64,000 bases of DNA, taken from contig NC_073399.1 of assembly GCF_028641065.1 (NCBI RefSeq), forward strand, positions 32,736,001-32,800,000, read 5' to 3'. A program made the translations under genes and the position numbers. Under the pieces are notes generated by a model that did no database searches, was not told the DNA's origin, and saw only the letters and a list, made by a program, of their open reading frames with translations. This DNA is from Leucoraja erinacea. Taxonomy: Eukaryota. Below are positions 13,525 to 48,700 of this stretch, piece by piece; position 1 is the stretch's first letter, and the number at the start of each line of letters is the position of its first letter.

Positions 13525-13660
13525 GCATCGTGGCTCAGTGGTTAGTGCTCCCATTTCTGGGTTGGAAGGTTGTGGGTTCAAATCCCACTCCAACGCACAG
13601 AAATCTAGTGATGTTTGGGTGCTGAACAGGGGGAGAACTGCAGTGGTGGGTCTGTTTTTC
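13525..13660 (+). mobile_element. Old tRNA-derived SINE head (SacSINE1/DeuSINE-like)
   Basis: A box GTGGCTCAGTGG and B box GGTTCAAATCC, followed by a body unlike HE1. Family assignment is from recall only. Confidence 0.45.
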
Positions 13661-13694
13661 AAACAGTGGCACAGGCAACACAGGCAGACATGAG

Positions 13695-15240
13695 CACCTC
13701 CATCCCCCACCACGATGGTCTCACAGCCCTCCGGTTCTTCCTCGACCAGAGAAGCAACCCATACCCAGCCACTGACACTCTCCTCCGCCTAGCGGAGCTG
13801 GTCCTTACCCTCAATAACTTCACGTTCGACTCCTCCCACTTCCTCCAAATCCAAGGCGTAGCTATGGGCACACGCATGGGCCCCAGCTATGCCTGCCTAT
13901 TTGTAGGTTACGTTGAGCAATCCTTGTTCAATACATACCAGGGCCCCATCCCCAACCTCTACCTCCGCTACATCGACGACTGCTTTGGTGCCACCTCCTG
14001 CACCCGCACACAACTGACTGACTTCATCCACTTCACCACTAATTTCCATCCGGCACTGAAATACACCTGGACCATTTCCGACACTTCCCTACCATTCCTT
14101 GACCTCACTATCTCCATTGCAGGTGACAGACTTCTAACCGACATACACTACAAACCCACTGACTCCCATGGCTATCTTGACAACACGTCTTCCCACCCTG
14201 CTTCCTGTAAGGACTCCATCCCCTACTCCCAATTCCTCCGTCTACGCCGCATCTGCTCCACGGATGAGGCGTTCCACACCAGGACATCTGAAATGTCCTC
14301 ACTATTCAGGGAACGGGGGTTCCCCTCCTCCACCATAAATGAGGCTCGCACCAGGGTCTCCTCCATACCCCGCAACACTGCTCTCTCTCCCCATCCCCGC
14401 ACTCACAACAAGGGCCGAGTCCCCCTAGTCCTCACCTTTCACCCCACCAGCCGTCACATACAAAAAATAATCCTCCGTCAGTTTCGCCACCTCCAACGTG
14501 ACCCCACTACTCGCCACATCTTCCCATCTCCCCCCATATCTGCCTTCCGCAAAGACCGCTCCCTCCATAACTCCCTTGTCAATTCTTCCCTTCCCTCTCG
14601 GTCCACCCCCTCCCCGGGCACTTTCCCTTGCAACCGCACGAGATGCAACACTTGTCCCTTTACCTCCCCCCTCGACTCCTTTCAAGGACCCAAGCAATCG
14701 TTCCAGGTGCGACAGAGGTTTACCTGCATCTCTTCCAACCTCATCTATTGCGTCCGCTGCTCTAGATGTCAGCAGATCTATATCGGTGAGACCAAGCGGA
14801 GGTTGGGCGATCGTTTCGCCGAACACCTCCGCTCGGTCCGCAATAACCAAGCTGACCTCCCGGTGGCTCAGCACTTCAACTCCCCCTCCCACTCCGCCTC
14901 CGACCTCTCTGTCCTGGGTCTCCTCCATGGCCACAGCGAGCAGCACCGGAAATTGGAGGAACAGCACCTCATATTCCGTTTGGGGAGTTTGCACCCCCGG
15001 GGCATGAACATCGAATTCTCCCAATTTTGTTAGTCCTTGCTGTCTCCTCCCCTTCCTCAGCTCCCCTGCTGTCTCCTCCCACCCTCCAGCCTTCTGGCTA
15101 CTCCTCCTTTTCCCTTTCTTGTCCCCACCTACCCCTACCCCCGATCAGTCTGAAGAAGGGTTTCGGCCCGAAACGTTGCCTATTTCCTTCGCTCCATAGA
15201 TGCTGCTGCACCCGCTGAGTTTCTCCAGCTTTTCTGTGTA
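13695..15240 (+). mobile_element. Penelope-like retroelement, 5'-truncated, open RT + GIY-YIG ORF, with 3' terminal repeat
   Basis: GVAMGT and YLRYIDD (RT); NLIY..YIGET and RFAEH (GIY-YIG); 15-bp TSD ACAGGCAGACATGAG at 13680-13694 and 15241-15255; inserted inside a SINE. Confidence 0.95.
15150..15177 (+). ncRNA. Minimal hammerhead-ribozyme-like motif in the Penelope terminal repeat
   Basis: CUGAAGA-A-[GGGU UUCG GCCC]-GAAA-CG-UU. Penelope-like elements are known to carry minimal hammerheads. Stem I is weak and there is an extra A. Confidence 0.65.
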
Positions 15241-18699: not shown

Positions 18700-19920
18700 C
18701 TGAATGATTATGATAATAGGCAAGAGGGTTTTTCATATCCTAATCTAACACTTGTTTCAGGAATTTAACTTGATAAAATAATTTAGTTTGCAGATCATGT
18801 AAAGTCTTGTCACTTCAACTCTGTGCCATCTGTCACGAAATAAAGGGCAGCACAGCAGCGCAGCTAGTAGTGCTGTTGGCCCGCAGTGCCAGAGACCCAG
18901 TTGCGAACTTAACCTCGAGTGCTGTCTGTGTGGAGTTTGCACATTCTCCGTGTGGGTTGCCTCTGGGTGCTCTGCTTTCCTCCCACATCCCACAGATTGC
19001 ACTTTGGGAAGTCAAATGCAAGAGGAATGTATACAATAAATGATAGGACTCTTAGGAGCACTGATGTACAAAGGGGTCTTAGGGATAGACACAAAAAGCT
19101 GGAGTAACTCAGCGGGTCAGGCAGCATCTCTGGAGAAAAGGAATAGGGGATGTTTCGGGTCGAGACCCTTCTTCAGTCTTCAAGGGATCTTGAGGTGCAA
19201 GTTCATAGCTCCTCGAAAGTGACACACAGTAGTCAAGCTGGTAGAGAAGGCATGGTTCCCTTCATCGGTGATGATGTTGACAATTCAGGAAGTCAGGTTG
19301 TAACTGCGTAACATATTGGTGACGTTGCATTTGGACTATTGTGAGCAGGTTGTTGTTGCCGTACTGCAGAAAAGGAGAGGGGGTGTTGAAGAGGGTGAAA
19401 AATGGGCTTACCTAGATTCTGGATTGATTAGAGAATTTTCTAAATTCTAAAAGGAGAGATTGAACAAACATGATTGTTTTATCTGGAGCATTGAGGTTTG
19501 ATGGAGGTTGATAGAGGTTTATAGAATAATGAGCGGGTAAATAGTCAGTCTTTTTCCCAGTGTGCAAATGTCAAATACTTGAGGGTATAGCTTTAAGCTG
19601 AGAGAGGGATAGTTTAAAGGAGATTGACCAGGCAAGTTTTCTTAACACAGCCGTAAGTGCCTGGAGTACACAACCAGGGAAAGTGTTGGAAGCAACATTT
19701 AAGAGGTGTTTAGACAGGATTTGGTCAGGAAGAAAATGGACGGATATATACAATGGCTGATGGAATGAATTTAGATTGGCATCACAGTCTGTGCATACAT
19801 TGTTGGCCAAAGGGCCTGGTCCCATGCAACACCATTCCATGTGCTACGTTCTAATTAAAGGTAAAGAAGGCGCTCTTATTTGACATTGTAAAACATTTTA
19901 TTTTAAAAAAATTGACATAC

Positions 19921-19965
19921 CTATTAGATTTGACCGTGATGTTTCAGAAAATCTCCTCATCGATG
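19921..19965 (-). CDS. IgSF receptor cytoplasmic exon (ASMRRFSETSRSNLI)
   Basis: Acceptor GATTTTCTCTAAAG, donor G|GTATGT; 45 nt, phase 1-1, open frame, unique sequence. Confidence 0.7.
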
Positions 19966-20884
19966 CTTTAGAGAAAATCACAACATTATTATTCAAGTAA
20001 ATGTCAGGTTAGCAGTAGGTTAGAGTTGAAAGATTATTTCCTAGATAGCATTGCTTCATAAACATGCACCATGTCACACTCCTGTCTAACACCAAACTCT
20101 CGTCTTTTTTTAAACTCTAGATGTGTCTCGAGGTGTTAGGCGAATGGGCCAATGTAAGGCTAATGGAGTTTACTGTGGATAATCATTTACATTGGTACTT
20201 AAAACAGGAAGGCATTATTACTCGAGTCAATGATAGACTGGCAAAAGAAAATGTGCTGATGCCTGGTGTCCATGTGCACCAATTGTTGAGATTGAATCCT
20301 AGCGAGCCGCAGCCATGTGCCCAAAAACAGGCTGGGGTGGAATGGGAGAACTCGGAAACCACCCGGTGGGGAGGATGGAGAGAAACGGTGGCGGACACTG
20401 GATACAGGGCCCCTGTGAGGCACTGCCCATCCCAACAACTGGCCCGACTCACCCGCTGCGAGAGGAGGAGGATAGAAGGAGACGACGGCGGTTGCTGGAC
20501 CAAGGGCCCAGTAAGAAGAACTGGGGGTCTTATGTTCTGCTCCCTCAAGTTCCGTTGCGGGAAGCGCCCCCCCCCCCCCTCCCAAGAACAAGGGATAAGG
20601 CAGCGGTGCAAGGAGAGGGACATCGGATCGCGGGACGACACAGATTGAAACGATGGCTTTAACAAGCTTTTGTGGCCGGCTGCAGCAGGGACTGTAAGAT
20701 GGCATCAAAATGGCACCTCTTGCATACAACTAGTGCACTGTTCTACATTCTGTGTTAACTGGTAGATGGTGCTTATGTACGTGGATAATCTTGCTGAGTT
20801 TTATGCAAAAAATGTATTTCACTGTACCTGGGTACACATGACAACAAAGAAACATTGAACCATTGAAAGCAGCATTCAGTTTAG

Positions 20885-21190
20885 GTTAGTTTAGTTTAGA
20901 GATACAGCATGGAAACAGGTCCTTTGGTGCACCAAGTCCACACCGACCAGCGATCCCCGCTCATTAACACAAGCCTGCACACACTAGGGACAATTTACAC
21001 ATACACCAAGCCAATGAACATACATACCTGTTTGTCTTTGGAGTGTGGGAGGAAACTGACGATCTCGCAGAAAACCCATGCGGTCACGGGGAGAACGTAC
21101 AAACTCTAGACAGACAGCGCCCGTAGTCAGGATCGAACCCGGGTCTCTGGTGCTGCAAGTACTGTAAGCAGCATCTCTACCCATGCACCA
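20885..21190 (-). mobile_element. HE1-like V-SINE
   Basis: B box GGTTCGATCC, V-SINE-like core GAGTTTGTACGTTCTCCCCGTGACC, (AAACT)n tail. Further copies at about 13075-13330, 18845-18990, 21475-21915, 28990-29285, 29440-29655, 32325-32580, 32700-32950, 33540-33815, 34140-34345, 42635-42915, 54535-54700, 55215-55505 and 63420-63635. Confidence 0.85.
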
Positions 21191-21983
21191 CTGGCCAGCC
21201 ACCCACGTCGTGGCTGCTTCAGCTAGCAAGGCCTCCATTGCAAGAAAGTTTGAGTACAGGAGCAAGGCTGAACTGTGCAACTGCACAAGATCTGGCTGAA
21301 ATCCAATCTGTTTCATGTGCTATTTTGATCCCATTGATGTGAGCAGGAATGTGTTTGTTATGGAAGGATTGAGTGGTTGTTCACTAGACTGATTCCCGTG
21401 ATGGAGACATTGATGGGTGGGCAGAGAATAGGTTAGTCAGATCTATATTCACACAAGATTAGAATAAAGAGAAAATAGGTGGCTCAGTGGCACAGCGAGT
21501 GGAGCTGCTGCCTCACGGCACCAAAGGCCCGGGTTCAATTCTGACCTCGGGTGCTGTCTGTGTGGAGTTTGCACGTTCTCCATATAACCGTGTGGGTTTC
21601 CTCTGGGTGCTCCGGTTTCCTCCCACATCCCAAAGATGTGCAGGATTGTAGTTTAATTGGCCTCTATAAAAAAAATGTCGCATTGTGGCACCCATACATA
21701 ACGTGCTCCAAAAATAACAAGTTAACTCTCCATTTTATAGCTGGCTGCATATGATATAAATTCAGGAGATAACAGTGACAGGGACCAAGAGAAGTCTGTG
21801 TTGGAGAGTGGATGCAAAAGGGGGATAACATAGAACTAATGTGAACAGTCGATCGATGGTCGGCATGGACTAGGTGGGCCGAAGGGCCTGTTTTCATGCT
21901 GTATCATTAAACTAAATGATTCTTTGAAAACTGCTATGCAAAAATCAGTTTTTCCCTTTCAATTATCAGAATTAATAGTTTAC

Positions 21984-22124
21984 CTCGAGATGACCGTTTT
22001 TTGTAGTAAAACATTGCTGAGAATATCAGAAGCATTAAGAAAACCACGGATAGAATAAGACCAACACCAGTTCTCTCCCTGTCTTTTGATTTCTCCAATG
22101 CTGCTGTATTTGAGTACCCAGATC
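21984..22124 (-). CDS. IgSF receptor stalk + transmembrane exon (GSGYSNTAALEKSKDRERTGVGLILSVVFLMLLIFSAMFYYKKRSSR)
   Basis: Acceptor TTATTTTCTATTTCAG, donor G|GTAAAC; 141 nt, phase 1-1; ~22-aa uncharged hydrophobic helix followed by KKR stop-transfer. Confidence 0.88.
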
Positions 22125-22244
22125 CTGAAATAGAAAATAAATAATTAACGTGTCTCAAAAGGAAGAATATACTTTACTTTAGACTTTAGAGATGCAGCAG
22201 GGAAACAGGTCCTTCAGCCCACCTAGTCCGTGCTAACCCCATGC

Positions 22245-23070
22245 ATCTAGCACTCTGGTGCCAGGATAACAGCCTCCTCTTGAACATCAAAAAAACGAAG
22301 GAGCTGATCATGGACTTTAGGAGAGCACATCATCCGAGGACGTACACTCCATTGAGGATAAATGGGGATCCTGTGGATAGGGTGAACTGTTTTAAATATC
22401 TGGGAGTCCACATCTCCGAGGATATGACATGGGCATCACACGCCTCAGCACTCGTGAGTAAGGCAAGGCAGCGCCTTTACCACCTCAGGCAATTGAGGAA
22501 ATTCAGAGTGTCTCTGAGGATCCTCCAGTGCTTCTACGCAGCGGCGGTGGAAAGCATCTTGTCCGGGAACATTACCATCTGGTTTGGGAATTGCTCTGCC
22601 AAGGACAAGAAGGCTCTGCAGAGAGTAATGCGTTCAGCCGAACGCACTATGGGAACTTCACTCACCCCCCTGCAGGAACTATACAACAGGAGGTGCAACT
22701 CCAGAGTAAACAAAATCATGGGAGACCTCTTCCACCCCTGCAACGGACTGTTCCAGCTGCTACGGTCAGGCAAACGCCTCCGTTGCCATGCGGTGAGAAC
22801 GGAGAGGTTGAGAAGGAGTTTCTTCCCAGAGGCAATTCGCAATTACAGAGACTGTAAACGCCTATCTCACCAGGGACTAACTCTACAGAACGTTTTTCCT
22901 TCCATTATTTATTATGTAAAAGAATATGTGTGTTATGATTGTGTTTATAATTTGTTTGGTTGTTTTGTTGTTTGTCTTTTGCACAAAAGTCCGCGAGCAT
23001 TGCCACTTTCATTTCACTGCACATCTCGTATGTGTATGTGACAAATAAACTCGACTTGACTTGACTTGAC
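22245..23070 (+). mobile_element. Rex1/Babar-type LINE, 5'-truncated
   Basis: Near-identical to 8268-9184; (GACTT)n tail. Confidence 0.9.
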
Positions 23071-24274
23071 TAGCACTATTCTACACACCCAGGACAATTT
23101 ACAGAAGCACCTGGAGAAAACCCAAACTCCGTACAGACAACTACTGTCGTCAGGATCAAACCTGGGTCTCTGGTGCTGTAAGTCAGAAGCTCTACCACTG
23201 AACTGCTCTGATTTCTTCTTGATAAAGTAGATTTTATAATTTATTTATACAAGGCACTTGTGACACAGAATGGACAGGAATCTGAGACCAGGGAATAAGG
23301 ACAATACTAATGGAGACTCAACTCTGGATGACGGTTAAACCCAATGCGGGGCTCACTGAAATTCCATTGTAATCATAACTAACTTATGAAAATTATGTGT
23401 CCAGAAGCCTTGGAAAAAACCATGCCTCACATCAAGCAGCAAAGCTTACAGAGGAGGGGAGTCAGAGAGTGTGGAGGGCCCTTGGAGAGATACCCAGCAG
23501 GGGATGCAGAGAACGAAGGGGGACCTGGCTGGGGTGGGGGGTCACCGAGATCAAAGGGGGGGGGGATCCAGCGGAAGAGGGGAGTGGGCTGTTGCCACTT
23601 GCGGCTGCAGGCAGTTGATAGGACTGTTCGGCGCAGTTTTGTAACTTAGTCAGTGCCAAAACATGGCAACACTTGTGTACTGCCTCGGTGAAGTCTGCTA
23701 TATAATTTTACAAGGTTGTTTGCAAAACAAAGCATTTCACTGTATCGAGACATGTGCAACATTAAAGTATCATTGAATCATTGAGTATTCAACACTGTGA
23801 TTCTTCAGAGATGGAACTCAGTTTATAGCTTGAAGGATTTTCGGTTGACTCACTCTCTGCAATGAGTTTTATTTTATAGTCAAAGTTAACCTATTATTGC
23901 CTGATTGCAATTAGAGCAAAAAATGGCCTAAACATTTAACATTTTCATTATGTTTGCAACATTAAAGAACTAGTTCCAATCAAAATCATCGCATCGATAA
24001 TAATAAAAATAACATATAACTATGCAATGAAGGGTGGAACAGTGACTCAGCTGGTAAAACACTTCCAGTCCGAGCGGCGATGGGTCTTTCAATTAAATCC
24101 TAGCGCTTTGGCTCAACTGGAGAGACCTACATCAGGTAACGCCGTAGTGGTAGTTGACTCAATAGTGGGAGGTACGGATAGGAGATTCTGTGGAAACAGG
24201 CGAGATTCGAGGTGTTGCCTCCCTGGTGCCAGTGTTCAAGACATCTTGAATTGATTGCTGGGCATCCTCAAAGG

Positions 24275-25114
24275 CAGGGGTGGAAATCCCAGGGGGGTGG
24301 AGGGGCGGGGCAGGGGACACACGTCCCCCGGTTTTGAGAGGTGGGGGACGAACCCCCCCATTTTTTGTAATCCGGATTTTAAAACCCGGTGAAATCTTCG
24401 CTTTCCGCGAGACAGTGGGGGTGGGACTGCTGATCGAGGGCGCCGATTGGATGGGAGAGACGTGGGGGCGGGACATGATGATTCAGCGCGATCATTGGAG
24501 GAGGGTCCTGTCGGTCACAGGCGGAAGTGGAGGGGGGGGGGGTGGGGGGTGGGACTGAGGATAGAACGTGGTCATTGGAGGAGGGAGACGTGCCAAAACA
24601 CTCTTGGCAGCCCTGGACACCAACCTGCGCCTCATCCGCAGCCAGGATCGACCCCGGCTCTCCGGCGCTGCAATCGCTGCCGAACTGCCACTGGACCATC
24701 TCCAGGGGGTGGCCAGAGACGTCGGGAGTCAGACAGGAGCTGTGCCCCCAGGCCCATAGCCAGCACAGAGAAGCAGCGCTAAATCTAGCTCAACTCTGCC
24801 TGTCCTGCCAGGTTAACCTACAGCCCTGCCTGGATTTACGGGAAATATGGCCCAGGTTTACAGCCAGCGCGGAGAAGCAGGACTAGCTCCACGACTCCAG
24901 GCTGGTGTCTCGTCAGTCCAGGCAGGGCTGTAGGTTAACCCGGCGAGACAGGCAGAGTTGAGCTGCATTTAGCGCTGGATTGAGCTGAAATAACCGTTCA
25001 AAAGGCCCACGGCTGAAGCCTCTGAAGGCTCGCGTGTGAGTGAGTGTGCACATGCGCGCGCGGTCGCCAAGAAGTGGTGTCCCCCCCATATTTTGATAGC
25101 GATTTCCGTGCCTG
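24275..25114. mobile_element. Non-autonomous hAT element nested in CR1 ORF1
   Basis: TIRs CAGGGGTGGAAATC / GATTTCCGTGCCTG; 8-bp TSD CTCAAAGG / CTCAAGGG; internal ~60-bp inverted repeat 24773-24834 vs 24916-24978. Confidence 0.85.
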
Positions 25115-25485
25115 CTCAAGGGGGAAGGGGAGCAGCTGGAAGTGGTTGTGCAAGTTGGCACAAATGACGTTGGGAAGAAGAGGAAGGAGGTTCTGCAACA
25201 CGAGTTTAATGATTTCGGAAGAAGGCTGAAAAGCAGGACCTCTAGGGTGTTTATCTCTGAATTGCTTCCAGTACCTCATGCTGGTGAGGGCAGAAACAGG
25301 GAGATAGGGGATCTGAATGTACAGCTGAGGGGCATATGCAGGGGGCAAGGATTTTGATTTATAGACCACTGGGATCTCTTCTGGGGTAAGGGGGACTTGT
25401 ACCATAGGGATGGGTTACACCTTAACTGGAGGGGGACCAACATTCTGGCAAGTAGGTTTGTTAGTTCTGCACAGGGTGGGTTAGA

Positions 25486-26360
25486 CATAGAAACATCGAA
25501 AATAGGTGCAGGAGTAGGCCATTCGGCCCTTCGAGCCTGCACCGCCATTCAATATGATCATGGCTGATCATCCAACTCTGTATCCCGTACCTGCCTCTCT
25601 CCATACCCCCTGATCCCCTTAGCCACAAGGGCCACATCTAACTACCTCTGAAATATAGCCAATGATCTGGCCTCAACTGCCTTCTGTGGCAGAGAATTCC
25701 AGAGATTCACCACTCTCTGTGTGAAAAATGGTTTTCTCATCTCGGTCCTAAAAGACTTCCCCCTTATCCTCAAACTGTGACCCCTTGTTCTGGACTTCCC
25801 CAACATCGGGAACAATCTTCCTGCATCTAGCCTGTCCAACCCCTTAAGAATTTTGTAAGTTTCTATAAGATCCCCCCTCAATCTTCTAAATTCTAGCGAG
25901 TATAAGCCGAGTCTATCCAGTCATTCTTCATACGATAGTCCTGACATCTCAGGAATCAGTCTGGTGAACCTTCTCTGTACTCCCTCTATGGCAAGAATGT
26001 ATTTCCTCAGATTAGGAGTCAAAAACTGTACGCAATACTCCAGGTGTGGTCTCACCAAGACCCTGTACAACTGGAGTAGAACCTCCCTGCTCCTATACTC
26101 AAATCCTTTTGCTATGAATGCTAACATACCATTCGCTTACTTCACTGCCTGCTGCACCTGCATGCCTACTTTCTGAAGAAGGGATTCATCCCGAAACGTC
26201 ACCTATTTCCTTCGCTCCGTAGATGCTGCTGCACCCGCTGAGTTTCTCCAGCATTTTTGTGTACCTTCTGCCTACTTTCAATGGCTGGTGTACCATGACA
26301 CCCAGGCCTCGTTGCATCTCCCCTTTTCCTAATCGGCCACCATTCAGATAATAATCTGGG
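25486..26360 (-). mobile_element. CR1 family A LINE 3' portion
   Basis: LVRPHLEYCVQF and TRGHSL motifs; tail with a private TTTTCGATG variant. Confidence 0.9.
26174..26268 (+). mobile_element. 95-bp Penelope terminal mini-insertion starting at the hammerhead-like core
   Basis: 11-bp TSD TGCCTACTTTC (26163-26173, 26269-26279); (C)TGAAGAAGGGATTCATCCCGAAACGTC. Confidence 0.8.
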
Positions 26361-26964
26361 TTTAAACTAAATAGCCGGGGGGGGGGGGGGGGGGGGGGAA
26401 TCGACAAATTGGAAGTACAAAGATGGAGTTAAAGGGGAAGAGAGTAAAGTTATGAAAGACACCTGAATTAATGGAACGGAAAGTTCAAGAAAGAATAAGA
26501 GAGTAAGGTCAAGTGAAATAGGAACTGGTGTGAGAGGGGAGGTGAATACCAAATTTAAAATGTTATATATGAATGTGGGAAGTATAAGAAATAAAGTAGA
26601 TGAGCTTGGGGCTCAGTTAGGGCTCCAATTACTTTATTATATGATAAATCAGGTCATAAATGAACCATGAGATTAAAGTAAACTGAGATACAATAGGTGC
26701 TAAGAGTTCTCTATTACTCAGTCAAGGTGTTGTATCTATAAATCTAGAGATAATAGTTGTAGGAGCTGTTATAAATGGAATGACCAAGCCAAATAAAACA
26801 CTCAACAATATCGTAATTGCAGATTTCCAGTAATAGGATTTCTGTATGTTTATCTCTGGGACCACTGCCAACTCCATATGTCCATATATACCATTAAAGG
26901 CACTAAATAAGTCGGAAAAACAAGGGAATGCAGATGCTGGTTTACAAACAAAAATACAAATTTT

Positions 26965-27437
26965 ACTAAAATGTTGCCTGGGTTTCAGCACCTAAGTTAC
27001 AGAGAAAGGTTGAACAAGATAGGTCTTTATTCTTTGGAGCACAGAATGTTACAGGGGGACTTGATAGAGGTCTTTAAAATTAAGAGAGGGATAGACAGAG
27101 TTGACGTGGATAAGCTTTTTCCATTGAGAGTAGGGACGATTCAAACAAGAGGACATGATTTGATAATTAAGGGACAAAAGTTTAGGGGTAACATGAGGGG
27201 GAACTTCTTTACTCAGAGAGTGGTAGCTGTGTAGAATGAGCTTCCAGTGGAAGTGGTGGAGGCAGGTTTGATTTTATCATTTAAAAATAAATTGGATAGG
27301 TATATGGACGGGAAAGGAATGGAGGGTTATGGTCTGAGTGCAGGTAGATGGGTCTAGGTGAGAGTAAGTGTTCGGCCCGGACTAGAAGGGCCGAGATGGC
27401 CTGTTTCCATGCTGTAATTGTTATATGGTTATATGGT
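26965..27437 (+). mobile_element. CR1/HER1-like LINE 3' portion (family B)
   Basis: Homologous to 11484-12007. Confidence 0.9.
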
Positions 27438-27456
27438 TGTAAAGTGCCGGAGTTGA

Positions 27457-27692
27457 GGGCCTGTTCCTCTTTCAAGACCTAATTCACAACCTTTTTTACT
27501 CGTGGACATTTTTCATCACGCTAGAAAAAACGCCCCCGACCTACTTGATGCCACGAGTACCTACAACTAGCATCACAGCCTGCTACGACTTACCTCCAAC
27601 CTCCTCTGACCTTGTGAGGGCTATGCTGCGAGTATGATTCAAAGGCAAAGTCGGCAGAGGTCGTGAATTAGGTGTGAAATTGGGAAAGGCCC
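27457..27692. mobile_element. PIF/Harbinger-like MITE
   Basis: ~35-bp imperfect TIRs GGGCCTGTTCCTCTTTCAAGACCTAATTCAC / GTGAATTAGGTGTGAAATTGGGAAAGGCCC; flanks TGA/TTA. Confidence 0.65.
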
Positions 27693-28647
27693 TTATCACA
27701 GACAGCATCTCTGGAAGACATGGATAGGTGACGTTTCAGGTCAGGACTCTTCTTAAGACTGCAGGAGGGAGGGGGAAAAGACGGAAAAGAGGTGGGGGCA
27801 TGACAAATCCTGGTGAATGATAGGTAGATACAGGATAAAGGGGGGTTGGTGTTGCAGATTGGAGGGCACTGAGCCAGAAATGCCAAATATCGTACAGTTC
27901 CTTCACATTTATCTACCTTTCATTTGAAATGACTCTGGATAGCTTACAGCTCCTTGCTCTCATCAAATAGCAGAAAACTGATGAAGTTTGTGTATCAATA
28001 ATAAGACTTCTCTACTTGTCATTCACAAAGGCCACTTGTTGCACAATTTATCAATATCTGATATTTCTCCATCAAAACCTTCTATTTTCTCAATTCTCAC
28101 AGCATTTAATATGTAAACTGAATCTTCATGAGAGGAATAGATCGGGTAGATGCACAGAGTCTTTTGCCCAGAGTACGGGAATCAAGGACCAGAGGACATA
28201 GGTTCAAGGTGAAGGGAAAAGATTTAATAGGAATCGGAGGGGTGACTTTTTCACACAAAGGATCTTGGGTGCACGGAACAAGCTGCCAGAGGAGGTAGTT
28301 GAGGCTGGGACTATGCCATAATTTAAGAAACAATAAGACAGGTATATGAATAGGACAGGTTTGGAGAAATATGGATCAAACGCTGGCAAGTGGGACTAGT
28401 GTAGCTGGGACACTGTTGGCCGGTGTGGGCGAGTTAGGCTGAAGGGCCTGCTTCCACACTGTATCACTCTATGGCTACTAAGGGTCTCGACCCGAAACGT
28501 CACCCATTCCTTCTCTTGACAGATGCTGCCTGGCCCGCTGAGTTACTCCAGCATGTTGTGTCTATTTTCCGTTTAAACCAGCATCTGCAGTTCTCCCCTA
28601 AACATGATCTCACTTACGCATCCACTCCCTGGTGCAATATTACTCAC

Positions 28648-28953
28648 CTTCAACGATCAAAGTGATGAGCGCAAAGTCATATCCATGATCTTTACGCACA
28701 GTATACCGATACGTTCCGTTATCTGACAGTTCCGTTTTATGGATAATCAGTGACAGATCATATGGGTCTTGATGGCGTAATTGGATTCGATCCTGACCTC
28801 CAAGAACATTCAATGTTTCATCACGGGTTGGATCTTGATGCAGTTTTATTAATGTGATGTTAGTTGGACCTGTTGTATCTGTTTTGCACGGTAGGGTGGT
28901 ATCCTCATGCAGTTTTCCTGTCACAGATTCGTTACAAACCAAAGTCACAGATG
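28648..28953 (-). CDS. IgSF receptor, second V-set-like domain exon
   Basis: Acceptor TCTTTCTATGATTTTCAG, donor G|GTGAGT; 306 nt, phase 1-1, open; TTLPC, DLSLIIHKTELSDNGTYRY, ITLIVE. Confidence 0.88.
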
Positions 28954-29799
28954 CTGAAAATCATAGAAAGAAGAGGGACAGGCCTTTTAGAACGCCGCGG
29001 TGCATCAGTAGAGCTGCTGCCTCACAGCGGCAAAGACCCGGGTTCGATCCTGACCTTGGGTGCTATCTGTGTGGAGTTTGCATGCTCACCCTGTGACCAT
29101 GTGGGTTTTCTCTGGTTCCCTCCTGTATTCCAAAGACGTGCGGGTTTGTAGGTTTATTGGCCTCTGAAAGTTGCCCAAAGTGTGCAGGGTGCAAAGGGGG
29201 ATAACATAGAACTAATGTGGGGGTGATAATGGTTGGCATGGGCTCGGTGGGCTGATGGGCCTGATTCCATACTATCACTCTATGATTAAGGGTCTCAACC
29301 AGAAATGTCACCCATTCCTTCTCTCCAGAGATGCTGCCTGGCCCACTGAGTTACTCCAGCACTTTGTGTTTATTTTCTGTTTAAACCAGCATCTGCAGTT
29401 CCTCCCCACACATTATCTCACTTGCTCATCCACTCCCTGCACACTAGGGGGAGGTTTACTTTTATAGAGACCAAATAATTCCCACAACCCACAAAACTTT
29501 GGGATGTGGGAGGAAACCAGAGCACCCGGAGGAAACCCACGCGGTCATAGGGAGAACGTGCAAACTCCACACAGACAGCACCCGAGGTCAGGATCAAACC
29601 CGGGTTTCTGGCGCTGGAGGCAGCTGCCCAACCACAGCTGTGCCACTGTGCCGCCCACTAAAGAAATATAGAGTTTAAAAAAAAAGCCGTGGTAATACTC
29701 TCTGAACGTAATCCTCAACATTCCATAAATTTACCAAACTCACACCTGTGCTTTGGAAGCGGAAAGCTGCAATTTATTAACAATTAACTGTAACCAGTA

Positions 29800-31897
29800 C
29801 AGGTGCACAACCTTTTATCCGAAGATCCAAATAACGAAAGCCTCCGAATAGCGGACATTTTTTCGGTCCTTGAAGAAAGGTCCTTGAAAACGTTCACCGA
29901 GGGCGGCCCGCAGAGGTGACAGCGGAACCTCTGGTCGGTCCTCGAAGAAAAGGGAACTAAATCCCCATTCATAAAAGAGAAGGTGAGGGTATATTGCGCA
30001 GGAGGGTTAATAATTGACAATATGCTGCTACCTGCCCGCTGCGTTAAAAAGTTCCCACGGTAGACACGATACACAGTGTATCGTGAGTCTTGCGTGGGAA
30101 CTTTTTAACTCAGCGTGCAGGCAGCAGTAGATTGTCGCTCCCTTCAGTTTCACCCCACCTACACCCCTCTGCTTCCCGGCCATGTGTGTGACCCCTTCCC
30201 CCCCCTCTCCAGCTCCCCGCTCAATGCACCGGCGCGGGGGCTTTGTACTGTCTTCACGTCGCGATGCTAGCAGCACAGTGCAGTCACCGGAGACGTCAGG
30301 ACCAACGGAACACCGACCCCCAGGCCCACTGCAAGCACGGAGATCCCAGATCAGCAACTCCAGCCCAGCCCCGTTCCAACTCCAGAGGAACACGCTCCCT
30401 GTATGGGCAGAAGCTGATGGTGTGCAAGGGCTCCGTCTTGTTCTTGGGGTCGCGCAGCTCGGGCTGTGGGCGAACTGCCACTTGTCGCCATAGCGGCCCA
30501 CTGGGGAGCGGATTCCTCTGGAGTTGGAGGGGGAGGGGGGTATTGTGCTGTTTGATCGCCCCCTACTATCCCAGGGACAGTGAGACAGGACGTTCACCGA
30601 GGGCGGCCCGCAGAGGTGACAGTGGAACCTCCGGTCGGTCCTCGAAGAAAGGGGAACTAAATCCCCATCCATAAATGAGAAGGTGAGGGTATATTGCGCG
30701 GGAGGGTTAATAATTGACAATATGCTGCTGTCTGCCCGCTGAGTTAAAAAGTTCCCACGGTAGACTCACGATACACAGTGTATCGTGAGTCTTGTGTGGG
30801 AACTTTTTAACTCAGCGTGCAGGCAGCAGCAGATTGTCGCTCCCTTCAGTTTCACCCCACCTACACCCCTCTGCTCCCCGGCCATGTGTGTGACCCCTTC
30901 CCTCCCCTCTCCAGCTCCCCGCTCATTGCACCAGCGCGGGGGCTTTGTACTGTCTTCATGTCGGCGATGGCAGCAGGCCAGTGCAGTCACTGGAGACGTC
31001 AGGACCAATTGGACGTCGACCACCAGGCCCACCGCAAGCACGGAGAACCCAGAGACCCACAGCCAACAGCAGCCCAGCCCAGCCCCGCTCCAACTACAGA
31101 GGAACCTGGGTTGCGGATGACGGGGCGCAGCTTGGGGCGTCGTAGGGGCCCATCGGGGAGCGGGTTCCTGTTGGTCCTGACGTCTCCGGCCACCTGCTAT
31201 CCTCCGGGAACTGTACCGCCCTTGCAGGAGAGTGGGGTTGTTTGCAGTTGCAGAGGGAGGGGGCAAGGGCGGTACAGTTCCCTGTCTCAGCTCCAGTCCA
31301 GGGGGGTGGCCGGAGACGTCAGGACCAACGGGACAGCGACCCCCAGGCCCACTGCAAGCACGGAGACCCACAGCCAGCAGCAACTCCAGCCCAGCCCCGC
31401 TCCAACTCCAGAGGAACACGTAGGGGCAGAAGCGGATGGTGTGCAAGGTGTTCTTGGGGTGGCGCAGCTCGGGCTGTGGGCAAACTGCCACTTGTCGCCG
31501 TAGCGGCCCATCGGGGAGCGGATTCCTCTGGAGTTGGAGGGGGAGGGGGGTATTGTGCTGTTTGATCGCCCCCTGCTATCCCAGGGACAGGGAGACACAG
31601 CGGCTTTTTAGACTGGTGGGCAATCACTTCCAAAGTTCTGCCCACACAGTCAGTACACCTCTCCTACACTGCATTTCATACTGCAAGAAAAAACGACATT
31701 GAAGACTCAAACTCGCGACCGAGTAACTGCCGGGATCAAGGCGCAAACTCGCGACCTTGCGGATATGAGCCGAGCACTCTACCACTGAGCCAGCCATTAA
31801 AATCTACGCTAAAAAATTTCCATTCCGAAGACCGACAAATTCTGAATTACGAAAAGTGTCTGGTCCCAAGGCTTTCGGATAAAAGGTTGTGCACCTG
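29800..31897. mobile_element. Non-autonomous Tc1/mariner (pogo/Tigger-like) element with internal tandem amplification
   Basis: 24-bp perfect TIRs CAGGTGCACAACCTTTTATCCGAA and TA target duplication; ~700-bp unit at 29890-30589 repeated from 30590. Confidence 0.85.
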
Positions 31898-31943
31898 TAT
31901 TTAAAAAGTGAAAGAAAGGAAGAGAAAGTACAATATTACTCAC

Positions 31944-32279
31944 CTTCAACGATCAAAGTGATGAGAGCAGATGCATGTCCATGTGTTGCATACAAGGCAT
32001 ACTGATACGTCCCGTTATCTGACAGCTCCGTTTTATGGATTATCAGTGACAGATCATGTTGACAACGTAATTCATCTTGACAACGTAATTGGATTCGATC
32101 CTGACCTCTACGAACATTTTCACTTGAGGTGGAGATCAATTTTTTATTACGGGTTTGATTTTGATGCAGTTTTATAAATCTGATGTCAACTGGGTCTGTT
32201 GTATCTGTTTTGCACGGTAAGATGGTATCCTCATGCAGTATTCCTGTCACTGATGCGTTACAATCCAAAGTCACAAATG
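31944..32279 (-). CDS. IgSF receptor, first V-set-like domain exon
   Basis: Acceptor TCTTTCTATGATTTTCAG, donor G|GTGAGT; 336 nt, phase 1-1, open; TILPC, DLSLIIHKTELSDNGTYQY, ITLIVE. Confidence 0.9.
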
Positions 32280-32964
32280 CTGAAAATCATAGAAAGAAGA
32301 GGAACAGGCCTTTTAGAACAGAGTGGTGCAACCCTGGAGCTGCTGCCTCACAGCGGCAACGACCCGGGCGCTATCTGTGTGGAGTTTGCAGGTTTTCCCT
32401 GTGATCCTGTGGGTTTTCTCCGGTTTCCTCCTATATTCCAAAGACGTGCGGGTTTGTAGGTTAATTGGCCTAAGTAGGCAGGGTGCAAAAGTGGGATAAC
32501 ATGGAAGTGTACGGGTGATCATGGTTGGCATGGGCTCGGTGGGCCGAAGGGCCTGTTTCCATGCTGTATCTCTGAACTTAAAACTAAACACAACATCTGT
32601 GCCAAACATGTTGTCAACATAAACTGATCTCATCTGCCTGCACGTGACAACATGCCTCCATTACCTGAATATCCATAAGCTTCCATCAACTTCTAGTAGA
32701 GTTTAGAGATATGGCCTTTCAGCTCACCAAATCTGCACAAACCACCAATCACTTGTTCATACTAGTTCTATGTTGTCCCACTTTCCCTACAAGTCACGGG
32801 CAATTTACAGAGGCTAGTTAACCTGTAAATCCATCTTTTGAGATGTGGGAGGAAACCAGAGCACCAGGGGAAACCCACGCGGTCACAAGTTGAACGTGCA
32901 AACACCACACAGACAGTAACTGAGAGCAGCATCAAACCCGGGCCTCTGGGTTTTAGGTACTTAC

Positions 32965-33028
32965 TTTCTGCAGAGGGTACGCATAAGTGTAGAATGAAAT
33001 AAAGATAAAATGTGAGGCATAAATCCAT
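32965..33028 (-). CDS. IgSF receptor signal-peptide exon (MDLCLTFYLYFILHLCVPSAE-T)
   Basis: ATG at 33028, hydrophobic leader, perfect phase-1 donor A|GTAAGT; a pyrimidine-rich acceptor before 33046 suggests an upstream non-coding exon. Confidence 0.85.
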
Positions 33029-34840: not shown

Positions 34841-36124
34841 AATAGGAGGGGGGATCGATATGCGCAACCAAGAGGTGTAGAAATACTATAAATGTATACT
34901 TCCCATCTGTATTCACCAAGGTGAAGTGTGTGCAGTATAAGGAGTTCGGGTTTGAACATGCAGGCATTGAGATGGTGTTATTAGATTGTCTTGGAATGTT
35001 TAAAGGTGAATAAATGCCCAGAGCCACACAGGATCTACGTCAGAATGACGTGGGGAAACAAAGTCAAGTACAGTTCAGTTGAGTTTAGTTCACAAATACT
35101 GTGAGAATCAGGGCAATGGAACTCTCGCCTGTAGCAGGAGCACAGGCACAGACTCAGCCAACATGCAAAAACATAAGCTATATGTAACATACATAAATTA
35201 CACATACATTCTGCAAGGCAGCAAAAAATAAATAAGACTACAGAAAAAGACAATACATAGTGCAAAACACAAGTAGAAAAATAATCATTGTAGTGCAAGA
35301 GGTGGTCCTTAGGTTCTGTTGTCGAAGTAGGATTAGGGTTGTATGCGCGGAAACATGCCCATACTCATCTACGGGTGCTATCTGTACAGAGTTTGTACAT
35401 GCCCAACTTGCCAACACTGACCAATAGGTCCCACCTACAGTAGTCCTACCTGCCTGCGTTTGGTCTATATCCCTCTAAACCTATCCTATCCTTGCAACTA
35501 TCTAATTGTTTCTTAAATGTTATGATAGTACCCGCCTCAATTACCTGGTAGCTCGTTCCATGCACGCACCACACGTTGTGTAAAATAGTTACCCCTCATG
35601 TTCCTATGAAATCTTTCCCCCCCTCACCTTAAACCTATGTCCTCTGGTTCTTGATTCCCATTTTGTGGGCAAGAAACTGTATGTCCACCCGATCTATTCC
35701 TCTCACATCCTCCTGCGCTCCAAGGAATAGAGTCCTAGCCTGATCAACCGCTCCCTAGAGCTCAAGCCCTTGAGTCCTTGGCCTTGGAAATATTGTAAAT
35801 TGTCCCTAATGTGTATGATAGTGTTTGTGTAGGGGATGGTCGCTGGTTGGAGCAGACTTGTTAGGCCTGAGGACCTGTTTCTGTGCTATATCTCTAAAGT
35901 ATTGCGTTGAATTGATTGTTGAGATTTTTGCAATCATATTATCCCCAGGTGAAGACTAGATGATAGCTAATGTTGTTCCTTTCTTTCAGAAGGACAGTGT
36001 AAGCCCGGTAACTTCAGACAGGTAAGCCTCAGGTCAGTGGAGAAACAAGGAAATGCAGGTGTTGGTTTATTTTAAAAAAAAGACAAAGATACGAAGTGAG
36101 GATCAGCCTGCTGGATGTGCTGCA

Positions 36125-38720: not shown

Positions 38721-39345
38721 AAGCGGCAGTTGATGCATACTGGGAGCTCAATTGTAGATAGGACATATATAGTCAATGGCAGCACTAAGGAATATTGATG
38801 AACAGATAAACCTCTTTGTCCAAGTCCATTATTCCATCGGAGGAATTGATTGGGGAGATGCACAAATTCTTGCCCAGAGTAGCGGAAATCTAGAACCAGA
38901 GACCATTGGTTTGTGAGGGAGGAAAGATTTAATAGGAACTTGAGATGTAACTTTTTCACACAAAGGTGGGTGTATGGAACGAGCTGCTGGTAGAGGTAGC
39001 TGAGGCAGGTACTGTTGCAACGTCCAAGAAGCAATTAGACAGGTACATGGGCAGGACAAGTTGAGAGGGATATAGGCCAAACGCAGGCAAGTGAGACTAA
39101 TGTGGATGGGATATGTTGGCCGGTGTGGACATGGTGTTATCTATAATGCGCTGTCAGAGAAGGTGGTAAATTCAGATACCAATTACTACGTTAAGCACAG
39201 ACAGATTGTTCAGAGCCAAGCTTAGAAGGATACAGGCAAATGGAATTGGTTTAGTTGGACTAAAATGTTGGCATGGACATGGTGGGGCCGAAGACCCCTT
39301 ACTGTGCTGTACAGGTTTGTGAATCAATAACAATAGAGTTTATGA

Positions 39346-43418: not shown

Positions 43419-44402
43419 ATCTCCAAACTCTAGATTTAGCTTTCCTACATTAACCCCAGATGCCTTGATATGCTTCTTGTCTAAAATCAGTCAGTAATTG
43501 AGTTGACTGGGCCGCCATCGGCTTCTTTGGTAGAATTGTCCAAAGCAAAGTTTAACATATGGTGAGATTTTGACGGCGTTGGGCCTATTCTCTCTGGAGT
43601 CTGGCAGGATGAATGGGAGCCTCATTGAAAACTACTGAATAGCAAAGTGCCTGGATTGAGTGGATGTGGAGAGGATGTTTCCGCATGTGGAGAGGATGTG
43701 ACCAGTGGGCATAGCCTCAAGATAAAAGGACATACCTTTACAAAGGAGATGAGGATGAATGTCTTTAGCTAGTTGGTGGTGAATTTGTGGAATTCATTGC
43801 CATGGAGTGCTGTGGGGACTGTAATTGGGTATTTTTAAGGTGCAGAATATTGATTAGTAAGGGTGTCAAGGGTTTTGGGGGGTAGGCAGTAGAATGGGGT
43901 TGAGAGGGATAGATAGATCAGCCATGATTGAATGCCGGAATAGACTTGATGGGTCAAATGGCCTAATTCTGCTCCTATGACTTATGAACTTCACGGCCCC
44001 CCGGGAGATGACGTTCCTTACCCCCGTTGTCCTGAACAGCTGATTCCTGAACCTAGACGTGATGTCAGCACCAGATACATGAGCTGATTAGTGTTCTGTA
44101 ATTATCATTGCACACCACATCAAACGTTTGGGAGTTTTTCATGAGATCATCTCTCATTCTTGCAAACTCTCTCTCGAGGATCAATCCACTTAGCCTCACC
44201 AACAAAACCCTTCTCCCACGATAGACACAAAGTGCTGGAGTAACTCAGCGGGTCAGGCAGCATCTCTGGAGAAAAGGAATATGTGATATTTTGGGTCAGA
44301 CCCTTCTCCAGATGCTGCTTTATATCATCAACATCTGCAGTTCCTTCCTACACATTTTGCCTGCTCCCTAGAATCAATCTGGTGAGCTTTAGTATTAAAG
44401 TC

Positions 44403-44824
44403 GAAACATAGAAAATAGGTGCAGGAGTTGGCAATTCGGCCGTTCGAGCCTGTACCGCCATTCAATATGATCATGGCTGATCATCCAACTCAGTATCCTG
44501 TACCTGCCTTCTCTCCATACCCCCTGATCCCTTTAGCCACAAGGATCACATCTAACTCCCTCTTAAATATAGCCAATGAACTGGCCTCAACTACTTTCTG
44601 CGGCAGAGAATTCCAGAGATTCACCACTCTGTGTGAAAAATGTTTTTCTTATCTCGGTCCTAAAAGACTTCCCCTTTATCCTTAAACTGTGACCCCTTGT
44701 TCTGGACTTCCCCAACATCGGGAACAATCTTCCTGCATCTAGCCTGTCCAACCCCTAAAGAATTTTGTAAGTTTCTATAAGATCCCCGCTCAATCTTCTA
44801 AATTCTAGCGAGTACAAGCCGAGT
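44403..44824 (-). mobile_element. CR1 family A LINE 3' portion (donor of templated copy at 51320-52102)
   Basis: Family A 3' UTR and tail. Confidence 0.9.
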
Positions 44825-47889: not shown

Positions 47890-48700
47890 TGAGAGTACAG
47901 AGAAGGTTCACCAGACTGAGTCCTGGGATTTCAGGACTTTCATATGAAGAAAGACTGGGATAGACTCGGCTTATACTCGCTAGAATTTAGAAGACAGAGG
48001 GGGGATCTTATAGAAACTTTTGTATTGGACTGGCTAGTTCCCGATGTTGGGGGAGTCCAGGACAAGGGGTCACAGTTTAAGGATAAGTGGGAAATCTTTT
48101 AGGACCGAGATGAGAAAAACATTTTTCACACAGAGAGTGGTGAATCTGTGGAATTCTCTGCCACTGAAGGTAGTTGAGGCCACAGTTCATTGGCTATATT
48201 TAAGAGGGAGTTAGATGTGGCCCTTGTGGCTAAAGGGATCAGGGGGTATGGAGAGAAGGCAGATACAGGATACCAAGTTGGATGATCAGCCATGATCATA
48301 TTGAATGACGGTGCAGGCTCGAAGGGCCAAATGGCCTACTCCTGCACCTATTTTCGATGTTTCTATGTCTAACCCACCCTGTGCAGAACTAACAAACCTA
48401 CTTGCCAGAATGTTGGTCCCCCTCCAGTTAAGGTGTAACCCATCCCTTTTGTACAGGCCCCCCTTACCCCAGAAGAGATCCCAGTGGTCTATAAATCAAA
48501 ATCCTTGCCCCCTGCATATGCTCCTCAGCCGTACATTCAGATCCCCTATCTCCCTGTTTCTGCCCTCACCAGCATGAGGTACTGGAAGCAATCCAGAGAT
48601 AACCACCCTAGAAGTCCGGCATTTCAGCCTTCTTCCGAAATGACGGTGCAGGCTCGAAGGGCCGAATGGCCTACTCCTGCACCTATTTTCTATGTTTCTA
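47890..48700 (+). mobile_element. CR1 family A LINE with duplicated tail enclosing a 274-bp inverted copy of 25212-25485
   Basis: Tail 1 ends at 48367, insert 48368-48641, tail 2 at 48641-48700. Confidence 0.85.

What the first reader, a model, noticed from the sequence alone, without database searches (positions are those of the whole stretch)
28425..32575. Second Ig exon appears to have arisen by SINE-mediated templated insertion
Seen: 28635-29270 (donor flank CAATATTACTCAC, exon, acceptor, adjacent SINE) is a copy of 31931-32570. It sits between two copies of a ~190-bp recipient segment (retroposon tail, Penelope piece, start of a minus-strand SINE) at 28433-28631 and 29250-29439, and only the second copy continues into the rest of that SINE. 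One junction lies in the shared tail motif GGC(C/T)GAAGGGCCTG..TTCCA; the other has at most a CA microhomology. Inference: this is a template-switch copy of exon V1 pasted into its own downstream intron, not unequal crossing-over of the whole intron. The symmetric phase 1-1 exon would have added a domain immediately.
Basis: partly seen in the sequence, partly recalled or inferred. Interest (0 to 1): 0.75.

Follow-up and report, generated by a model that had tools for sequence, protein, structure and literature searches.

The report
Skate Ig exon duplication with readable breakpoints
A little-skate immune-type membrane gene gained a second, still-used immunoglobulin V exon by a local DNA copying event whose two breakpoints can still be read, one inside the shared tail of a SINE and a LINE; this is a clear example of a known kind of exon duplication.

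Summary
X2 (28632-29281: donor flank, V exon, acceptor flank, plus-strand SINE) is a copy of X1 (31928-32573), 88.0% identical over 568 nt. It lies between two copies of a ~200-nt composite, A1 28426-28631 and A2 29239-29439 (88.5%). The two pairs are equally diverged.

None of 20 other copies of the abundant repeat inside A shares A's flanks, so A1 and A2 are true duplicates.

Junction J1 (28631|28632) is blunt. Junction J2 (about 29250-29275) lies in LINE-tail/SINE-tail homeology.

The gene matches Leucoraja erinacea LOC129708458, a B7-like gene without an IgC exon. NCBI isoforms exist with V2 and without it. The duplication predates the Leucoraja/Amblyraja split.

I favour one template-switching event (0.45). 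A tail-mediated tandem duplication followed by a ~390-nt deletion (0.35) cannot be excluded.

This is a new member of a known kind, of moderate interest. Earlier scan notes on this stretch are re-readings of the same DNA, not other DNA.

The parts
32965..33028 (-). Leader exon (ATG at 33028, phase-1 donor GTAAGT)
   Evidence: tblastn of P0001/P0002 residues 1-22; sequence read
31944..32279 (-). V1 exon, 336 nt, phase 1-1, V-set domain
   Evidence: PF07686, 34.2 bits against cut-off 26. Its translation is held exactly by P0052 and P0057.
28648..28953 (-). V2 exon, 306 nt, phase 1-1, V-set domain; cassette exon
   Evidence: 34.9 bits. Its translation is held exactly by P0057 and P0049 and is absent from P0052.
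31928..32573 (.). X1: donor flank (16 nt) + V1 exon + acceptor flank (~30 nt) + plus-strand SINE to its tail; continuous with its flanks on both sides
28632..29281 (.). X2: copy of X1, bounded by the two novel junctions
   Evidence: 88.0% over 568 nt
28426..28631 (.). A1: LINE 3' tail + abundant Penelope-like piece (28480-28604) + last 27-30 nt of a 3'-truncated minus-strand SINE. Continuous on its left with the LINE body (28123-28468).
29239..29439 (.). A2: second copy of A. Its first ~40 nt are the hybrid tail; it is continuous on its right with the rest of the minus-strand SINE (to ~29656).
28631..28632 (.). Junction J1 (A1|X2), blunt: CCCTG|GT(G/A)CAAT
   Evidence: three-way alignment
29250..29275 (.). 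Junction J2 window (X2 SINE tail into A2 LINE tail). The hybrid follows X1 up to 29249 and follows A1 from about 29275.
   Evidence: (diagnostic columns). A1 and X1 agree at 25 of 30 positions in the core and 33 of 43 over the wider tail.
28123..28470 (+). 3' end of a non-LTR LINE whose tail supplies the recipient side of J2
   Evidence: Matches other LINE 3' ends at 61946-62287, 35401-35705, 38840-39128 and 50560-50883. ORF 61983-62285 carries the C-terminal FFTQR..WN motif; the label 'CR1-like' is recalled.
29800..31897 (.). Tc1-like non-autonomous element: TA duplication, perfect 24-nt inverted ends, internal ~700-nt tandem repeats. Probably younger than the duplication.
   Evidence: 2 matches in the window, 0 expected; chance of 24 unchanged nt at 12% divergence = 0.047.
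21976..22131 (-). Stalk/transmembrane exon (approximate, from tblastn)
   Evidence: P0002 132-182, E 2e-17
19919..19975 (-). Cytoplasmic-tail exon (approximate, from tblastn)
   Evidence: P0002 178-195, E 3e-4

Best explanation
Firm part (about 0.9). In an ancestor of Leucoraja and Amblyraja, a local DNA-level rearrangement copied the V exon, 16 nt of its donor flank, its acceptor flank and the SINE next to it. The copy was set down a few hundred bases away, in the intron that follows the exon in the transcript. One breakpoint lies in the roughly 30-45 nt of imperfect homology between the SINE's 3' tail and the 3' tail of a LINE. The other is a blunt, homology-free join inside another SINE.

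The result is two copies of A and two copies of X, with a single-copy spacer between A2 and X1. The exon is symmetric (phase 1-1) and kept both splice flanks, so it could be spliced in frame at once. Today it is a cassette exon that encodes the membrane-proximal V domain.

Favoured path (0.45). There was one replicative event with two template switches:
1. Synthesis ran through A.
2. It jumped forward without homology to the start of X.
3. It copied X to the SINE tail.
4. It re-annealed through tail homeology at the LINE tail in front of A.
5. It copied A again and went on.

The structure, the junctions and the equal ages are shown. That both junctions arose in one event is inferred.
For: - Both duplicate pairs and both novel junctions are present.
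- A1/A2 and X1/X2 have equal divergence: K2P 0.125 against 0.126-0.131, Fisher p 0.90-1.0.
- A is a unique three-part composite: 0 of 20 other copies share its flanks.
- A1 ends inside a SINE that only A2 completes.
- The hybrid tail follows X1 at 18 of 19 informative columns from 29214 to 29249, then follows A1.
- In the 768 aligned nt of A and X, the longest indel in either lineage is 18 nt. A separate 390-nt deletion would therefore be an outlier for this region.
- Tail homology of only 25/30 to 33/43 nt is short for classical unequal crossing-over. It suits homeology-guided re-annealing (inference from recalled knowledge).
- In-frame use: NCBI isoform X1 (P0057) holds V1 and V2 exactly, joined by the predicted Ala codon. 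Isoform X2 (P0052) lacks V2.
- V2 is conserved between species (tree branch lengths).
Against: - J1 has no microhomology. Replicative template switches usually show 2 nt or more (recalled), and blunt joins are more typical of end joining. That fits a separate deletion.
- Nothing in the sequence can date J1 relative to J2.
- Large events do occur here, for example the 2.1-kb Tc1-like insertion.
- V1/V2 dN/dS is 1.00. Both ORFs stay open in 12.8% of 5000 neutral simulations. The pair alone therefore does not prove constraint.
Splicing evidence rests on database proteins only.
Confidence: 0.45

Rival explanations
1. Two steps. First, a tandem duplication of the whole unit (A' + rest of the SINE + spacer + X, about 1.2 kb at the time), by unequal exchange or slippage between the SINE tail and the LINE tail. 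Later, an end-joining deletion of the ~390-nt spacer in the left copy created J1.
For: The hybrid tail at J2 is what a tail-to-tail exchange gives. J1 is blunt, as in simple deletions. The limits of A and X would be set after the fact by the deletion, so no coincidence is needed. The final sequence is identical to the one-step product.
Against: It needs two fixed events. The longest other indel in the 768 aligned nt of A and X is 18 nt. Tail homology is only 25/30 to 33/43 nt, which is short for unequal crossing-over (recalled).
Confidence: 0.35
2. RNA-mediated copy. A plus-strand read-through transcript ending at the SINE tail was reverse-transcribed by the partner LINE's machinery. It was primed on a nick in the nearby LINE tail and 5'-truncated 16 nt past the exon. 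The nicks were staggered by ~160-200 nt, which produced the A duplication as a very long target-site duplication.
For: X ends exactly in a retroposon tail, and the recipient junction is in a matching tail. The exon is antisense to such an RNA, so its intron flanks would be kept. Two other local copies in the window have edges inside LINE sequences.
Against: The hybrid lacks the SINE's terminal ~20 nt beyond the junction. A 160-200-nt target duplication would be exceptional (recalled). Landing within about 1 kb of the source, in the same orientation, is very unlikely for retrotransposition.
Confidence: 0.07
3. A1 and A2 are independent insertions of a common composite repeat, and X2 arrived by an unrelated event.
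For: The 85-nt core of the piece is as similar to unrelated copies (up to 89-91%) as A1 is to A2. Only 2 of 86 core columns carry a shared non-consensus base (16 of the 20 other copies were used).
Against: 0 of 20 other copies share either flank. The composite joins three unrelated elements at the same points in both copies. A1 ends in mid-SINE. Its divergence equals that of X.
Confidence: 0.03

Closest known systems
Alu/Alu-mediated intragenic exon duplications in human genes (passages read in PMC10899794, e.g. TNNT1 exons 10-11 with a chimeric Alu at the junction)
   Same: An exon is duplicated within its gene. The breakpoint lies in directly oriented retroposon sequence and leaves a chimeric element.
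   Different: Here the homology is only the ~30-45-nt shared tail of a SINE and its partner LINE (25/30 to 33/43 identical), not two ~300-nt SINEs. The second junction is blunt and the spacer is not duplicated. The event is ancient, fixed and in frame rather than pathogenic.
Replicative template-switching rearrangements (FoSTeS/MMBIR). PMC2926785 (passages) cites Zhang et al. 2009 for exonic events; PMC5120786 (abstract) covers complex insertions with small flanking copy-number changes. The pattern name 'duplication-normal-duplication' is recalled, not from a call.
   Same: Two duplicated segments (A and X) flank a single-copy spacer. The inserted copy is flanked by a duplicated piece of the recipient site. 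One junction lies in short homology.
   Different: J1 has no microhomology. That it was a single event cannot be shown. The scale is about 1 kb, and the product is a functional new exon.
4Ig-B7-H3 (CD276), formed by exon duplication (passages in PMC12162284, which cites Sun et al. 2011, PMC3172298, not read)
   Same: A B7-type gene gains Ig domains by tandem exon duplication. Isoforms exist with and without the extra domains.
   Different: B7-H3 duplicated a V-C pair, and the pairs are 95% alike. Here a single V exon was duplicated, in a gene with no IgC exon, and the copies are 65% alike in protein.
Exon shuffling by LINE/SVA transduction (recalled; no paper read here)
   Same: An exon travels together with an adjacent retroposon whose tail marks one end of the copy.
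   Different: There is no terminal tail and no short target duplication. The copy is local and in direct orientation. See the third rival.

Membership tests
Immunoglobulin V-set domain (Pfam PF07686) | Profile match above the curated cut-off | tested here: met
   V2 34.9 bits and V1 34.2 bits against a cut-off of 26
Immunoglobulin V-set domain (Pfam PF07686) | Canonical B-F disulfide and C-strand Trp | tested here: not met
   The F strand reads YRY/YQY instead of YxC, and the C strand reads IKLHQ without Trp. The shark and ray relatives show the same, so it is a trait of this subfamily.
B7 family (V-C-TM ligands) | V domain most similar to B7-type proteins | tested here: met
   Single-V relatives at E 1e-12 to 1e-5 carry the source names PD-L2(-like), CD276(-like) and BTN1A1-like. 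These are automatic names. The weak PDB hits are VSIG4 and BTN2A1.
B7 family (V-C-TM ligands) | Membrane-proximal IgC domain | tested here: not met
   tblastn with the V-C-TM relatives gave no hit to their C-domain residues at E below 0.27 anywhere in the window. The 0.27 hit lies on the plus strand outside the V2-to-TM interval. The skate proteins P0057, P0048 and P0001 have none.
Replicative template-switch rearrangement (FoSTeS/MMBIR type) | Duplicated segments separated by a single-copy segment | tested here: met
   A and X are in two copies. 29440-31927 is in one copy.
Replicative template-switch rearrangement (FoSTeS/MMBIR type) | Microhomology or homeology at every junction | tested here: inconclusive
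   J2: met (25/30 nt). J1: none.
Replicative template-switch rearrangement (FoSTeS/MMBIR type) | All junctions formed in one event | not testable with these tools
   It needs orthologous genomic DNA or intermediate alleles. Equal divergence is compatible but not decisive.
Simple tandem exon duplication by unequal crossing-over | The whole interval between the recombining repeats is duplicated | tested here: not met
   The spacer and the rest of the SINE are absent between A1 and X2. A later deletion would hide this.
Simple tandem exon duplication by unequal crossing-over | Hybrid repeat at the novel junction | tested here: met
Retroposon-mediated transduction copy | The copy ends with the element's complete 3' terminus and has short target-site duplications | tested here: not met
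   The hybrid leaves the SINE tail ~20 nt before its end. The flanking repeat is 160-200 nt.

The most novel reading that the evidence does not exclude
A single replication template-switch, guided on one side by the 3' tail that a SINE shares with its partner LINE, gave a B7-type gene that had lost its IgC exon a new, immediately spliced second V domain. The V-V form of Rhinoraja arose by a second, independent event of the same kind. Such tail-guided local copying would then be a frequent mutational mode in this genome: first readers left 154 unchecked notes that fit 'templated insertion'.
Probability: 0.12. Interest if true: 0.65.

Novelty: new member of a known kind. Interest (0 to 1): 0.4.

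Why it matters
Exon duplication is the textbook route to multi-domain Ig proteins, but the DNA breakpoints are almost never legible after tens of millions of years. Here both are. They show that about 30 nt of tail homeology between a SINE and its LINE partner was enough to place one junction.

The case also documents a skate-specific remodelling of a B7-type gene. IgC is absent, V is doubled, and V2 is optional. The outer V1 is very variable among transcripts and V2 is conserved. That gives comparative immunologists a concrete gene to test.

Tried and rejected
- **Reads.** Splice joints, independent-sample support for J1 and J2, and alternative alleles therefore stay unchecked by reads.
- **Rfam.** A search of 28100-29480 gave only two sub-threshold chance hits and no hammerhead in the Penelope-like piece.
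- **Private variants in A.** Shared variants in the core of A1/A2 are uninformative: 2 shared, 4 and 6 private, of 86 columns.
- **PDB sequence search.** Only weak hits: VSIG4 at E 0.024 for V2, nothing meaningful for V1.
- **CD7-like reading.** It was prompted by a neighbouring scan note about a SECTM1-like ligand and by a CD7 hit at E 0.95. I rejected it in favour of B7-like, on the far stronger matches.
- **IgC remnant.** None found.
- **Literature.** No paper holds the three LOC identifiers. A search for skate + exon duplication + Ig superfamily + SINE found nothing on this gene. PMC4461229 is not held.
- **Other local copies.** I looked briefly at the other two 'tail-flank-tail' copies. 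Each copy extends one bounding LINE further than the other does, so donor and recipient could not be assigned. I left them there.
- **Joined model.** Exons were searched apart, and full-length queries were database proteins.
- **Supplements.** No supplementary files were needed or opened.
Full report
**What is there**

- X2 (28632-29281) is a copy of X1 (31928-32573): 568 aligned nt, 88.0% identity, K2P 0.131.
- A1 (28426-28631) is a copy of A2 (29239-29439): 200 nt, 88.5%, K2P 0.125.
- The non-coding part of X (acceptor flank plus SINE, 250 nt) is 88.4% identical, K2P 0.126.
- A and X do not differ in divergence (Fisher p 0.90-1.0).

**Anatomy**

On the minus strand, X holds a V exon: V2 28648-28953 (306 nt) and V1 31944-32279 (336 nt). 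Both are phase 1-1.

- The donor flanks are identical over the 13 nt next to the exon (GTGAGTAATATTG) and differ once in the 16-nt flank. The acceptor flanks are identical at 29 of 30 positions.
- A plus-strand SINE starts about 30 nt beyond the acceptor and ends at the right edge of X.

A is a composite of three unrelated pieces:

1. The last ~45 nt of a LINE whose body lies at 28123-28468. This body matches four other LINE 3' ends in the window. The label 'CR1-like' rests on a recalled C-terminal motif seen in ORF 61983-62285.
2. An abundant 85-125-nt piece (28480-28604). It also lies about 120 nt past a Penelope-like ORF with a weak GIY-YIG hit (E 0.0034, below the cut-off).
3. The last 27-30 nt of a 3'-truncated minus-strand SINE.

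An independent SINE copy at 42.4 kb shows that A1's end is SINE sequence. In A1 it stops at 28631, whereas A2 and the independent copy run on (for the rest of the SINE).

**Are A1 and A2 true duplicates?**

The core of the abundant piece cannot tell on its own. Unrelated copies are up to 89-91% alike. Only 2 of 86 core columns carry a base shared by A1 and A2 against the family consensus (16 of the 20 other copies were used).

The flanks do tell. Of 20 other copies in the window, 0 reach left of 28470 or right of 28612. Only A2 shares both flanks. With the mid-SINE end of A1, this rules out independent insertions of a common composite. No homology runs past the proposed junctions.

**The junctions**

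- J1 (28631|28632) reads CCCTG|GTGCAAT. A2 continues CCCTG-CACAC, and X1 is preceded by ...GAAA-GTACAAT.
- J2 lies in the tail. From 29214 to 29249 the hybrid follows X1 at 18 of 19 columns where A1 and X1 differ. From about 29275 it follows A1. In between, A1 and X1 agree at 25 of 30 positions, and at 33 of 43 over the wider tail.

**Geometry at the time of the event**

29800-31897 is a Tc1-like element with a TA duplication. Its 24-nt inverted ends are perfect and are the only two matches in the window. If it were as old as the duplication, the chance of no change in 24 nt is about 0.047. It is therefore probably younger. The donor exon then lay only about 390 nt from the recipient site, and the unit A'-spacer-X measured about 1.2 kb.

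**The gene**

tblastn with relatives places a leader exon at 33028-32965, V1, V2, a stalk/TM exon near 22131-21976 and a tail exon near 19975-19919.

- NCBI's Leucoraja erinacea LOC129708458 isoform X1 (P0057, XP_055510224.1, 299 aa) holds the translations of both window exons exactly. They are joined by the Ala codon that phase 1 predicts.
- Isoform X2 (P0052, 197 aa) holds V1 only.
- Amblyraja radiata LOC116988133 has the same two isoforms (P0048, P0002).

V2 is therefore a cassette exon in the gene models.

Twenty further two-V proteins come from Logan contigs of 965-1532 nt. The exons span 13 kb in the genome, so such contigs can only be spliced RNA (inference).

**Family**

A search of 1.84 billion representatives with V2 gave 43 proteins at E up to 0.001. 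I examined the 10 of these that are 196-300 aa long with one or two matched stretches. The other 33, mostly long multi-Ig proteins, were not examined.

- The stingray, sawfish and shark relatives are V-C-TM proteins named PD-L2(-like), CD276(-like) or BTN1A1-like by their sources.
- The skate proteins have no IgC domain, and the window holds no IgC remnant.
- The whole subfamily lacks the canonical F-strand Cys and the C-strand Trp.

**Dating**

In a tree of 19 V domains:

- The skate V domains form one clade (support 99/99).
- V1 of Leucoraja and Amblyraja group together (93/95).
- Their V2 domains group together (100/98).

V1 of both species shares a 4-residue insertion that V2 lacks. The 6-residue deletion of Leucoraja V2 is absent from Amblyraja V2. 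The duplication therefore predates the split of these genera.

The two V domains of Rhinoraja longicauda group with each other (90/88). Placing its V2 with the other V2 domains is rejected (AU p 0.008). This means either an independent duplication or gene conversion, and DNA is needed to tell which.

**Constraint**

V1 against V2 gives dN/dS 1.00 (Sd 11.0 of 70.8 synonymous sites; Nd 36.0 of 232.2 non-synonymous sites). Both ORFs stay open in 12.8% of 5000 neutral simulations. The pair alone is therefore weak evidence.

- Both exon indels are in frame (12 and 18 nt).
- V2 branches are very short between species: 0.011 and 0.044, against 0.135 and more for V1.
- Among 21 two-V proteins, V2 varies at 8 of 101 columns and V1 at 30 of 111.

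V2 is conserved. V1 is the fast or polymorphic domain.

**Mechanism**

The sequence fits three routes:

1. One replicative event with a forward, homology-free switch (J1) and a backward switch guided by tail homeology (J2).
2. A tail-mediated tandem duplication of the ~1.2-kb unit, then deletion of the ~390-nt spacer in the left copy.
3. Reverse transcription of a read-through RNA ending at the SINE tail, with a very long target duplication.

I rank route 1 first (0.45). It needs one fixed event. The tail homology is short for classical unequal crossing-over (recalled). No other indel in the 768 aligned nt of A and X exceeds 18 nt.

The blunt J1 counts against route 1 and for route 2 (0.35).

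Route 3 (0.07) is disfavoured for three reasons. The hybrid leaves the SINE tail before its end. A flanking repeat of 160-200 nt would be exceptional. The copy landed within about 1 kb of its source in the same orientation.

**Comparison with known cases**

- Chimeric-repeat junctions in intragenic exon duplications are well known for Alu (passages of PMC10899794).
- Template switching has been proposed for exonic and complex events (passages of PMC2926785; abstract of PMC5120786).
- Exon duplication made 4Ig-B7-H3 (passages of PMC12162284).

This locus is a new, unusually legible member of that kind. No paper in the library names the gene.

**Verdict**

- Observation: confirmed.
- Interpretation: partly supported.
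- Novelty: new member of a known kind.
- Interest: 0.4.

Noticed in passing
window 31944-32279 against 28648-28953; proteins P0049-P0071: Among 21 two-V proteins (1 NCBI, 20 from short Logan contigs), V1 varies at 30 of 111 columns (identity to the window 91-111 of 111). V2 varies at 8 of 101 (98-101 of 101). The outer V domain looks highly polymorphic or fast-evolving. The species of the unnamed contigs is unknown.
   Followed up: partly
window 19919-33028 (minus strand): The skate gene has no IgC exon and no detectable remnant. Its closest relatives in sawfish, stingrays and sharks are V-C-TM B7-type proteins. V2 sits where IgC would be.
   Followed up: partly
protein P0001 (Rhinoraja longicauda LOC144594901): Its two V domains are closer to each other than to V1 or V2 of Leucoraja and Amblyraja. 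The tree gives 90/88, and the AU test rejects orthology of its V2 with the other V2 domains at p 0.008. This means an independent duplication or gene conversion.
   Followed up: partly
window 29800-31897: A Tc1-like non-autonomous element with TA duplication and perfect 24-nt inverted ends. Inside it are ~700-nt tandem repeats (29890-30391 against 30590-31105, 91%; 30287-30587 against 31310-31597, 89%) and palindromic stretches.
   Followed up: partly
window 43620-44824 against 50896-52102; 25212-25982 against 47893-48641: Two other local inverted segmental copies (1207 nt at 96.1%; 775 nt at 90.8%). The edges of the first pair, the only ones read, lie inside LINE sequences. Each of its copies extends one bounding LINE further than the other, so donor and copy are not obvious. 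Scan notes s1-877773 and s1-877774 cover them.
   Followed up: partly
window 32061-32092: V1 carries a 12-nt insertion within a locally repeated TTGACAACGTAATT motif, giving ELRCQ. It is shared with Amblyraja V1 and absent from V2. Leucoraja V2 alone lost the 18 nt that correspond to 32118-32135.
   Followed up: yes
window 13615-15033: A 472-aa ORF of a Penelope-like element with a weak GIY-YIG match (E 0.0034, below the cut-off). The abundant 85-nt piece lies about 120 nt past its stop. No hammerhead was found in the copy inside A.
   Followed up: partly
whole genome (scan notes): 154 first-reader notes in this genome fit 'templated insertion'. One is a PARP2 exon copied within its own gene (s1-911198). 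All are unchecked.
   Followed up: no
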